The notes under the pieces: generated by a model
What the model saw: only the letters and a program-made list of their open reading frames with translations
Databases searched by the model: none
Told to the model about the DNA's origin: nothing
Part shown: positions 25,149-25,789 of the stretch, one piece after another
How the letters are laid out: each line of letters begins with the position of its first letter
Position numbering within the stretch: the first letter of the stretch is position 1
Position numbers and translations under genes: made by a program
Assembly: GCA_963924565.1 (NCBI GenBank)
Contig: OZ004611.1
Span: 20,088,001-20,152,000, forward strand
Length of the DNA stretch: 64,000 nucleotides
Direction: 5' to 3'
Source: Ascidiella aspersa
Taxonomy: Eukaryota

Positions 25149-25217
25149 TCTATAGGCAAAAAACTAATTATACCGATATTTACAAAAAAATAAGAACGCT
25201 TTTTTTTTCTTTTTTTA

Positions 25218-25301
25218 TGAGGTTTTGCGCGAACGCACACCCCGCTAACAGAAATTATACGGCCGAGTTACCCGCATTTGGGGTAATCGCAAGGGTCAGC
25301 C
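25218..25301 (-). pseudogene. U1 snRNA 3' half (SL3, Sm site, SL4) followed by poly(A)
   Basis: Minus strand GGCTGACCCTTGCGATTACCCCAAATGCGGGTAACTCGGCCGTATAATTTCTGTTAGCGGGTGTGCGTTCGCGC matches U1 from about nt 80, including the UUCG tetraloop. Confidence 0.88.
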
Positions 25302-25307
25302 TTTTTT

Positions 25308-25360
25308 TAATCGCGCCTCAGATAAACCTCATCAGCTACGATATCGCCACTGCGCAAAGT
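25308..25360 (-). pseudogene. U4 snRNA 5' fragment (about nt 1-54)
   Basis: Minus strand ACTTTGCGCAGTGGCGATATCGTAGCTGATGAGGTTTATCTGAGGCGCGATTA, versus canonical U4 AGCUUUGCGCAGUGGCAGUAUCGUAGCCAAUGAGGUUUAUCCGAGGCGCGAUUA. Confidence 0.9.
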
Positions 25361-25789
25361 CTTATTTTTTAAAAACACAAAAGCAAAAGCTACAATTCTA
25401 CGATAAATTAGTGTTATTGCCTTGGTTATAGTTTCTTTCTGGGTTTGTGGTGCTTTGGTTTACTTGGACTTCCGACTTGTAATTCAGTTGGCCTATTTAC
25501 TATTGGCTTCTCTTTTTTTAGGTTGGATGTCGCTTCGTTAACCCGTATATTTTGGTGGTTTTTCGCTTGTATGTTGTTGTCCTGGTGAAGTCTTTTGTTG
25601 GGTTCAGTCAGTGCTTGAGGGTCCTTTTTGTCGTTACATTATCTTCTAAGCTTCTAAGTAAAGGCCTACTCTTTTTCCAAAGTTACCAAAATAAATTATT
25701 TATTGAAGACAAATTACCTCTGCAGAAATATTGTAATGTCGTCACGTTGAATCTAAAAAAACAGTAAATACAGATAATCAAACATACAA

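What the first reader, a model, noticed from the sequence alone, without database searches (positions are those of the whole stretch)
25200..25687. Chimeric retro-cassette: LINE-like 3' end, U4 5' part, oligo(A), U1 3' half, poly(A)
Seen on the minus strand, contiguously: the decayed Lys-rich ORF end and UTR (25687-25361), U4 from about its first nucleotide to ~nt 54 (25360-25308), an A-linker, U1 from ~nt 80 to its 3' end (25301-25218), then an A-tail. Copy 2 has only an A-tract at the same site. Known: mammalian U6-L1 chimeras arise in L1 retrotransposition with the snRNA 5' of the LINE, and snRNA-headed SINEs exist. Inference: two different Sm snRNAs joined through oligo(A) downstream of a retroelement end suggest either serial template jumping across oligoadenylated snRNA decay intermediates, serial insertion into an A-tail, or a U4/U1-derived SINE family.
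Basis: partly seen in the sequence, partly recalled or inferred. Interest (0 to 1): 0.8.

Follow-up and report, generated by a model that had tools for sequence, protein, structure and literature searches.

The report
One-off U4–U1 snRNA retro-chimera
A single, young DNA copy of two spliceosomal RNA fragments (the first 54 letters of U4, six A's, then the last 84 letters of U1 with an A-tail) was reverse-transcribed into an A-rich spot of an old repeat in a sea-squirt genome; it is a one-off variant of known retro-pseudogenes, not a new jumping-element family and not part of a LINE.

Summary
On the minus strand lie U4 nt 1-54 (25361-25308), A6 (25307-25302), U1 nt 82 to its 3' end (25301-25216), then A6-G-A9. 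Both parts match Rfam U4 and U1 models (E 1e-6, 1.6e-11). Each differs by one base from this genome's own tandem-array genes.

- The upstream 325 nt is not a LINE 3' end. It has no Pfam match, and at least 10 related loci continue through the A-run into the same downstream sequence.
- The inverted paralogue (14121-15141) is an empty site with only an A-rich tract, so the cassette entered an existing A-run.
- The U4-A-U1 junction and both half-junctions are unique in the 308-Mb genome, so there is no SINE family.

The genome holds about 18 other dispersed U1 copies, with A-rich tails in the nine read, and several 3'-truncated U4 copies with short A-tails. Each half is therefore a known type.

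My best reading (about 0.6) is one target-primed reverse-transcription event. It started on polyadenylated U1, left it at nt 82 and jumped to an oligoadenylated U4 fragment. Serial insertion (about 0.25) is not excluded, because the A-rich target hides any target-site duplication. Public reads (contigs only) neither confirmed nor refuted the junction.

The parts
25362..25370 (-). Upstream half of the A-rich target site (AAAAAATAA, preceded by T5). It may be one copy of an A-rich target-site duplication.
   Evidence: Family copies read T5-C-A5-TAATG-A4-GCG at this place.
25308..25361 (-). U4 snRNA nt 1-54: the stem-II strand plus the whole 5' stem-loop. The 5' end is complete. It is cut in the single-stranded linker just after the 5' stem-loop.
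   Evidence: cmscan E 1.1e-6. 52/52 identical to some array genes. 53/54 to sampled array variants.
25302..25307 (-). Oligo(A) linker, A6 (A7 with U4 A54). It is not encoded by either snRNA gene.
   Evidence: The U4 gene continues TTGCTAG here, and the U1 gene has CGGCTT before nt 82.
25216..25301 (-). U1 snRNA nt 82-165 plus TA: the 3' strand of stem-loop II, stem-loop III, the Sm site and stem-loop IV. It ends at or 2 nt past the Rfam 3' end.
   Evidence: cmscan E 1.6e-11. 1 mismatch to the array gene; 100% to the C4:1340457 copy.
25200..25215 (-). A6-G-A9: the A-tail of the insert and/or the rest of the pre-existing A-run.
   Evidence: L068 reads A9-G-A4-GCG at the homologous place, so part of this stretch is probably ancestral.
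14430..14527 (+). Empty site in the inverted paralogue (copy 2): a 98-nt, 90%-A tract with no snRNA sequence.
25372..25684 (-). It is part of a low-copy repeat of at least 3 kb and is not part of the retro-insert.

Best explanation
This is a single, evolutionarily young retro-insertion made by a LINE-type reverse transcriptase acting in trans on snRNA fragments.

Proposed steps (all inferred):
1. The enzyme nicked the T-rich bottom strand of an existing T5/A-run site inside an old repeat.
2. It primed on the A-tail of a polyadenylated U1 RNA and copied U1 from its 3' end back to nt 82, inside stem-loop II.
3. It jumped to the 3' end of a second template, a U4 fragment ending at nt 54 that carried a short oligo(A) tail. 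Such a fragment is what nuclear RNA surveillance would leave once 3'-5' trimming stops at the protein-bound 5' stem-loop.
4. It copied that fragment to its capped 5' end.

Shown: the identity and breakpoints of both parts, their near-identity to the genome's own genes, the untemplated A6 linker, the uniqueness of the junction, the empty paralogous site, and that A-tailed U1 and 3'-truncated A-tailed U4 retro-copies occur elsewhere in this genome.

Inferred: that it was one event rather than two, that the U4 fragment was oligoadenylated as RNA, and which reverse transcriptase did it.

The locus has no evident function.
For: - Identity and breakpoints.
- Empty site in copy 2, and short A-runs at the same place in at least 9 other family copies.
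- Youth: 1/54 and 1/84 mismatches to source genes, against 6-8% divergence between the flanking paralogues.
- Uniqueness of the junction.
- Retroposition of snRNAs is active in this genome. 19 of 63 U1 3'-region matches lie outside the array. Nine were read, and all have A-rich tails; L004 has a ~10-bp target-site duplication. 3'-truncated U4 copies with short A-tails end at nt 79 (L097) and nt 68 (L098), plus an old nt 1-68 fragment.
- For one event: all nine other U1 retro-copies run 5' to nt 24 or less, whereas this one stops at nt 82 exactly where another RNA copy begins.
- For one event: with about 19 dispersed U1 copies and about 5 independent U4 events in 308 Mb, two independent same-strand hits 6 nt apart are expected about 3e-6 times if sites are uniform, and about 5e-4 times with 1e5 preferred sites (my estimate).
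- U4 nt 51-54 (AUUA) is not purine-rich, so internal priming on U4 by a T-rich primer is a poor fit.
- APE-type LINE endonuclease matches (at least 54), some in 1,000-aa open frames, exist in the genome.
- Literature: polyadenylated and 3'-truncated, A-tailed snRNA pseudogenes, and the surveillance-tail idea (PMC4476161); single and double template switches giving bi- and tripartite chimeras (PMC2104539).
Against: - An oligo(A) between the two parts is also exactly what two serial insertions into an A-run or A-tail would leave.
- The target is A-rich, so no unambiguous target-site duplication brackets the whole cassette. The best candidate is AAAAAATAAG against A9G, with 1 mismatch.
- The same site shows independent A-tract growth in paralogues (98 nt in copy 2; longer runs in L063 and L064). 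It may therefore be a hot spot, which raises the odds of two hits.
- No read or contig bridging the U4-A-U1 junction was recovered.
- The one LINE 3' end I could sample ends in (GAA)n, not poly(A). The responsible enzyme is therefore unidentified.
- No RNA evidence for an oligoadenylated U4 1-54 fragment.
Confidence: 0.6

Rival explanations
1. Two serial, independent retro-insertions at the same A-rich hot spot. One would be a polyadenylated, 5'-truncated U1 copy. The other would be a 3'-truncated U4 copy, oligoadenylated or internally primed. The second landed in the A-run or A-tail next to the first, and the A6 linker is leftover target or tail.
For: - Each half alone is a type seen elsewhere in this genome and in mammals (PMC4476161).
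- The site is T5/A-rich, like LINE endonuclease targets, and has changed independently in paralogues.
- The A-linker needs no special RNA species under this model.
Against: - Very low prior for two rare snRNA insertions 6 nt apart, on the same strand and both about 99% identical to their source genes (estimate).
- The U1 stop at nt 82 is an outlier among ten U1 retro-copies.
- U4 nt 51-54 offers poor pairing for internal priming.
Confidence: 0.25
2. Capture of two cDNA or RNA-derived fragments during repair of a double-strand break in the A-tract (end joining), without LINE endonuclease or target-primed synthesis.
For: There is no clear target-site duplication. There are two unrelated fragments joined head to tail.
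Against: - Both fragments are in the same orientation.
- Each ends in A's exactly at its RNA 3' side.
- The U1 part ends at the natural RNA 3' end and the U4 part begins at the natural 5' end.
- Sibling U1 copies carry tails, and one carries a target-site duplication typical of target-primed synthesis.
Confidence: 0.07
3. Assembly or read-chimera artefact that joined pieces of the U4 and U1 arrays.
For: No public contig bridged the junction, because contigs break at the high-copy snRNA words.
Against: - The fragments are 54 and 86 nt long, have RNA-defined ends and oligo(A) joints, and sit inside unique sequence 12 and 9 Mb from the arrays. That is not how misassemblies look.
- Run X1 holds the unique flanks at 100% identity.
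- An X2 contig runs from the flank through the tail and 19 nt into the U1 3' end (record 9).
Confidence: 0.03
4. A member of a U4/U1-derived SINE family, or the tail of a LINE copy.
For: Earlier scan notes report a U1-headed SINE family in this genome; I did not test this. An old U4 nt 1-68 fragment is carried in at least 10 copies of the surrounding repeat.
Against: - The junction and half-junctions are unique.
- The family-borne U4 fragment lies about 1 kb away, has different breakpoints and is only 85-92% identical.
- There is no reverse transcriptase or LINE protein signal.
- The A-run is internal to the repeat.
Confidence: 0.03

Closest known systems
Polyadenylated and 3'-truncated, A-tailed snRNA retro-pseudogenes (Denison & Weiner classes II-IV; groups II-III of Doucet et al. 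2015, PMC4476161)
   Same: - snRNA-derived sequence without a promoter.
- RNA-defined ends and A-rich 3' tails.
- Insertion at a T-rich/A-rich site.
- Truncation in a single-stranded segment (U4 nt 54).
- Proposed origin from surveillance-adenylated snRNAs mobilised by a LINE reverse transcriptase.
   Different: - Two different snRNAs lie in one cassette.
- The U1 part is strongly 5'-truncated.
- The host is an ascidian, not a mammal.
- The responsible LINE is unknown.
Bipartite and tripartite chimeric retrogenes formed by LINE template switching (Buzdin/Gogvadze; PMC2104539)
   Same: Two cellular RNA copies in the same orientation, with a 5'-truncated 3' part, a 5' part reaching the RNA's 5' end, and an A-tail at the 3' end. 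The paper also notes that human tripartite cases in A-rich DNA lack recognisable direct repeats.
   Different: - The 5' part is not a full-length RNA; it is cut at nt 54.
- The parts are not directly fused; A6 lies between them.
- No LINE or SINE component is present.
U6/L1 chimeras (template switch or RtcB RNA ligation; PMC4476161; 10.1101/2025.02.02.635956)
   Same: An snRNA copy sits at the 5' side of another reverse-transcribed RNA in the sense orientation, as a single-event product.
   Different: - There is no LINE segment.
- U6 in those chimeras is full length and directly joined.
- An A-tailed 3'-OH end is not an RtcB substrate (my knowledge), so ligation is unlikely here.
snRNA-headed SINEs (SINEU; my knowledge, plus earlier scan notes of a U1-headed family in this genome)
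   Same: They contain snRNA-derived sequence joined to other sequence and spread by retroposition.
   Different: SINEU are multi-copy families using the snRNA 5' head. This cassette is single-copy, uses the U1 3' half, and has no SINE body.

Membership tests
snRNA retro-pseudogene (LINE-mediated, trans) | Sequence derived from the mature snRNA, with RNA-defined ends and no gene flanks or promoter | tested here: met
   U4 starts at nt 1. U1 ends at the Rfam 3' end plus 2 nt. The flanks are unrelated to the array units.
snRNA retro-pseudogene (LINE-mediated, trans) | A-rich tract at the 3' side | tested here: met
   A6 follows the U4 part and A6-G-A9 follows the U1 part.
snRNA retro-pseudogene (LINE-mediated, trans) | Target-site duplication flanking the insert | tested here: inconclusive
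   The target is an A-run. The candidate AAAAAATAAG / A9G (1 mismatch) cannot be told from the tail.
snRNA retro-pseudogene (LINE-mediated, trans) | Demonstrable pre-insertion (empty) site | tested here: met
   The paralogue at 14430-14527 and at least 9 family copies lack the insert.
Bipartite chimeric retrogene (Buzdin/Gogvadze criteria, PMC2104539) | The 5' part is a full-length copy of a cellular RNA | tested here: not met
   U4 nt 1-54 of 136. Only the 5' end is complete.
Bipartite chimeric retrogene (Buzdin/Gogvadze criteria, PMC2104539) | The 3' part is a 5'-truncated copy | tested here: met
   The U1 part starts at nt 82.
Bipartite chimeric retrogene (Buzdin/Gogvadze criteria, PMC2104539) | Parts directly joined in the same orientation | tested here: not met
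   The orientation is the same, but an untemplated A6 separates the parts.
Bipartite chimeric retrogene (Buzdin/Gogvadze criteria, PMC2104539) | Flanked by short direct repeats | tested here: inconclusive
   A-rich target.
SINE family (snRNA-derived) | Many dispersed copies sharing the same internal junctions | tested here: not met
   The 24-nt junction with up to 3 mismatches gives 1 hit. Each half-junction with up to 1 mismatch gives 1 hit.
LINE 3' end as part of the cassette | Reverse-transcriptase or ORF remnants, and an A-tail that terminates the element (different flanks in different copies) | tested here: not met
   No Pfam hit. At least 10 copies continue past the A-run into the same sequence.

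The most novel reading that the evidence does not exclude
The internal A6 is a genomic fossil of an oligoadenylated U4 decay intermediate. That intermediate would be nt 1-54, trimmed back to the Snu13/Prp31-protected 5' stem-loop and tailed by the surveillance poly(A) polymerase. It would have been caught when a LINE reverse transcriptase jumped end-to-end from a U1 template. If so, snRNA-oligo(A)-snRNA chimeras would be a distinct class of retro-chimera that records nuclear RNA-decay intermediates, and they could be mined across genomes.
Probability: 0.35. Interest if true: 0.5.

Novelty: new variant of a known kind. Interest (0 to 1): 0.3.

Why it matters
This locus comes with its own empty site in the same window. 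That makes it an unusually clean example of a reverse transcriptase stitching two non-coding RNA fragments together outside mammals and fungi. The oligo(A) between the parts points to adenylated decay fragments as templates. It extends the catalogue of LINE-made chimeras to tunicates and suggests a search pattern (snRNA fragment, oligo(A), snRNA fragment) for other genomes. It is a single neutral locus with no sign of function, so its value is as a mechanistic anecdote rather than a new system.

Tried and rejected
- The whole-window Rfam scan at gathering score missed both fragments. The E-value scan was needed.
- Reads: the only holders are Logan contigs. They break at the high-copy U1 and U4 words, so the junction could be neither confirmed nor refuted. 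The 'skips' seen there are paralogous empty sites, not alleles.
- LINE reading of the flank: three reading frames and three ORF pieces gave no Pfam match.
- SINE reading: three pattern searches each found one hit.
- Looking for the enzyme: PF14529 finds at least 54 APE-type LINE matches. The one 3' end I could fetch ends in (GAA)n, not poly(A), so it is not an obvious candidate.
Nine of the roughly 18 other dispersed U1 copies and most dispersed U4 copies were therefore not read.
- The minimum-free-energy fold of U1 did not give the canonical cloverleaf. I used the Rfam alignment for structural positions instead.
- Trans-splicing or RNA ligation as the origin of the joint was considered and rejected: there are no splice-site motifs at the breakpoints, and an A-tailed end is not a ligase substrate.
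- The N run at 45655-45804 was left untouched.

Full report
**1. What is there**

Reading the minus strand, the order is as follows:
- a T5 run followed by AAAAAATAA (25370-25362);
- a 54-nt stretch (25361-25308);
- six A's (25307-25302);
- an 86-nt stretch (25301-25216);
- A6-G-A9 (25215-25200), followed by GCGTTC.

The whole-window Rfam scan at gathering score found only a decayed SSU rRNA elsewhere. An E-value scan of 24700-26200 gave two matches:
- U4 (RF00015): model positions 1-54 only, 38.1 bits, E 1.1e-6.
- U1 (RF00003): 51.3 bits, E 1.6e-11, with the convincing part being model ~85-166.

Both are below gathering score because each is a fragment.

**2. Source genes**

The window is G000:C5:20088001-20152000 in a 308-Mb, 75-contig genome. 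An earlier scan note calls the animal a sea squirt; I did not test that.

The genome has two snRNA arrays:
- a tandem U1-U6-U2 array, 1,193-bp unit, at C5:29.5 Mb;
- a tandem U4-U5 array, 632-bp unit, at C5:8.15-8.37 Mb.

Aligned to these genes, the cassette breaks down as follows.
- The first stretch is U4 nt 1-54. It begins GAC, as about 30% of the sampled array copies do. It differs at one position from the sampled variants, and 52 of its letters are identical to some array copies.
- U4 is cut just after the 5' stem-loop, in the single-stranded linker. The gene continues TTGCTAG there, while the cassette continues with A's.
- The second stretch is U1 nt 82-165 plus TA. It has one mismatch (C to T in stem-loop IV) to the array gene and is identical to a dispersed U1 copy at C4:1340457.
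- The U1 gene reads CGGCTT before nt 82, so the A6 linker is templated by neither gene.

**3. The flank is not a LINE end, and there is an empty site**

Self-comparison shows that 25684-20952 is an inverted paralogue of 14121-18163 at 92-94% identity.

At the homologous place, copy 2 has a 98-nt tract that is 90% A (14430-14527) and no snRNA sequence.

The flank family has about 10 longer members elsewhere in the genome. Aligned to the window, they are homologous from about 26527 to beyond 23500. They run through the A-run into the same downstream sequence. At this site they read roughly T5-C-A5-TAATG-A4-GCG, with A-runs of 15-35 nt.

The A-run is therefore internal to a low-copy repeat of at least 3 kb. 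It is not the tail of a LINE. The Lys-rich 70-codon frame and two neighbouring ORFs have no Pfam match.

Copy 1 also carries a 554-bp MITE (24524-25077) that copy 2 lacks. This again marks copy 2 as the older state.

**4. Not a family**

Three pattern searches of the genome each found one hit, which is this locus:
- the 24-nt U4-A-U1 junction, up to 3 mismatches;
- the U4-end-plus-A5 half-junction, up to 1 mismatch;
- the A5-plus-U1-nt-82 half-junction, up to 1 mismatch.

**5. Background of snRNA retroposition in this genome**

*U1.* A 28-nt U1 3'-region pattern (up to 3 mismatches) has 63 matches. Of these, 44 are in the array and 19 are dispersed, including this one.

I read nine other dispersed copies:
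- All reach 5' to nt 24 or less, and most start at nt 18-24.
- All are followed by A-rich tails.
- L004 has a roughly 10-bp target-site duplication.
- Two copies (L102, L104) end at U1's own A-run near nt 160; in L104 this is followed by A13.

*U4.* A U4 5'-region pattern has 374 matches, about 40 of them outside the array. Most of these come from an old U4 nt 1-68 plus A-rich fragment embedded in the same repeat family. At least 10 loci carry it, including window 14015-14066, and an internally deleted remnant lies at 24286-24255.

Independent younger U4 copies include:
- L097: nt 1-79 followed by TT-A8;
- L098: nt 4-68 followed by A4;
- L094: full length with 15 nt of gene 3' flank, 9-bp direct repeats and no tail.

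Each half of the cassette is therefore an ordinary local type. Only their union is unique.

**6. Age**

The flanking paralogues differ by 6-8%. The cassette differs from its source genes at 2 of 138 positions. If the insert dated from the duplication, about 4-5 changes would be expected on the pseudogene side. The insert is therefore probably younger, which fits the empty site in copy 2 (my inference).

**7. Mechanism**

The features seen are those of target-primed reverse transcription by a LINE-type enzyme acting in trans:
- RNA-defined ends;
- an A-tail;
- a T-rich/A-rich target;
- sibling copies with A-rich tails, one with a target-site duplication.

These features match the mammalian classes of polyadenylated and 3'-truncated, A-tailed snRNA pseudogenes, for which tailing by nuclear RNA surveillance has been proposed (PMC4476161).

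I favour one event with a template jump, for four reasons.
- The U1 copy stops at nt 82, an outlier among ten U1 retro-copies, exactly where another RNA copy starts.
- Both parts have the same orientation and the same youth.
- Two independent hits of such rare inserts 6 nt apart are very improbable. I estimate about 3e-6 for uniform sites and about 5e-4 with 1e5 preferred sites, from the counts.
- U4 nt 51-54 (AUUA) gives a T-rich primer little to pair with. The A6 is therefore better explained as a tail on the U4 fragment than as internal priming.

Single and double template switches giving bi- and tripartite chimeras are documented in mammals and a fungus. That paper also notes that cases in A-rich DNA cannot show their direct repeats (PMC2104539).

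Serial insertion remains possible. The linker is what it would leave, and the site has grown A-tracts independently in paralogues.

Break-repair capture and an assembly artefact are unlikely, for the reasons given under the rival explanations.

**8. Reads**

Runs X1 and X2 (one study) hold the unique flanks, X1 at 100% identity. All data are contigs that break at the high-copy snRNA words, so none bridges the U4-A-U1 joint.

One X2 contig runs from the downstream flank through the tail and 19 nt into the U1 3' end. This is weak support for that junction. The 'skipping' contigs carry other A-rich letters and are paralogous empty sites.

**9. The enzyme**

The genome has at least 54 APE-type LINE endonuclease matches, several in open frames of about 1,000 aa. 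The one 3' end I could fetch ends in (GAA)n.

A zinc-knuckle ORF element with AATAAA and a poly(A) tail lies at 11029-11955 in the window. The responsible reverse transcriptase is not identified.

**10. Verdict**

The cassette is a one-off snRNA-snRNA retro-chimera. It is a variant of known chimeric retrogenes and snRNA pseudogenes. It differs from them in that the 5' part is a 3'-truncated fragment and is joined through oligo(A).

The scan has noted other snRNA-derived retro-elements in this genome: a U1-headed SINE family and a half-U1 copy. I did not test these, and they are not this cassette.

Interest is modest.

Noticed in passing
window 24524-25077: A 554-bp MITE with perfect 15-nt terminal inverted repeats (CAGGGAGTCGAACCG) sits inside a (TA)n microsatellite. 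The first look gave more than 2,000 candidates genome-wide. It is absent from the paralogous copy 2.
   Followed up: partly
window 14015-14066; remnant at 24286-24255; loci L063, L065, L066, L068-L073, L095, L096: An old U4 nt 1-68 fragment followed by an A-rich tract is embedded in the surrounding repeat family (at least 10 loci, 85-92% identical to U4), always with the same flanks. It is therefore one ancient truncated U4 retro-copy carried along as the repeat amplified. Copies 1 and 2 keep only an internally deleted remnant.
   Followed up: partly
G000:C5:8.15-8.37 Mb and C5:29.50-29.59 Mb (L005-L060): A tandem U4-U5 array (632-bp unit, about 330 U4 matches, with GTC and GAC variants at nt 1-3) and a tandem U1-U6-U2 array (1,193-bp unit, 44 U1 matches).
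   Followed up: partly
L004, L088, L090, L091, L100-L104: Nine dispersed U1 retro-copies all have A-rich tails, and their 5' ends cluster at nt 8-24 (mostly 18-24). This suggests a preferred stop of the reverse transcriptase at the base of stem-loop I. L004 has a ~10-bp target-site duplication and includes a few letters of gene 3' flank.
   Followed up: partly
window 25220-25222 and G000:C4:1340455-1340474 (L002/L091): The same C-to-T change in U1 stem-loop IV (CCTCA instead of CCCCA) is shared by the cassette and one other A-tailed U1 retro-copy, but by none of the 36 array copies listed. It may come from a minor variant U1 gene that is preferentially adenylated, or it may be coincidence.
   Followed up: no
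L063 about 1075-1150 (G000:C7:29.065 Mb): A 68-nt A-rich insert is flanked by a perfect 9-bp direct repeat (TGAGTTTGA) just upstream of the family's U4 fragment. It looks like a tail-only retro-insertion.
   Followed up: no
L094 (G000:C5:25126539-25126966): A near full-length U4 copy (nt 4-136) plus 15 nt of the array gene's 3' flank, with no A-tail, bracketed by 9-bp direct repeats (ATAAAATAG). It is a tailless retro-copy of a 3'-extended precursor.
   Followed up: no
window 45080-46374 (-): A decayed, internally deleted eukaryotic SSU rRNA match (339.8 bits) is interrupted by the N run 45655-45804. The N run was left as it is.
   Followed up: no
window 11029-11955 (+): A 249-aa open frame with a CCHC zinc knuckle, followed by AATAAA and a poly(A) tract.
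   Followed up: partly
L099 (G000:C3:36860100-36861300): The 3' end of a LINE with a 1,032-aa open frame. The ORF ends in a Cys/His motif, and the element ends about 30 nt later in a (GAA)n tail, not poly(A).
   Followed up: no
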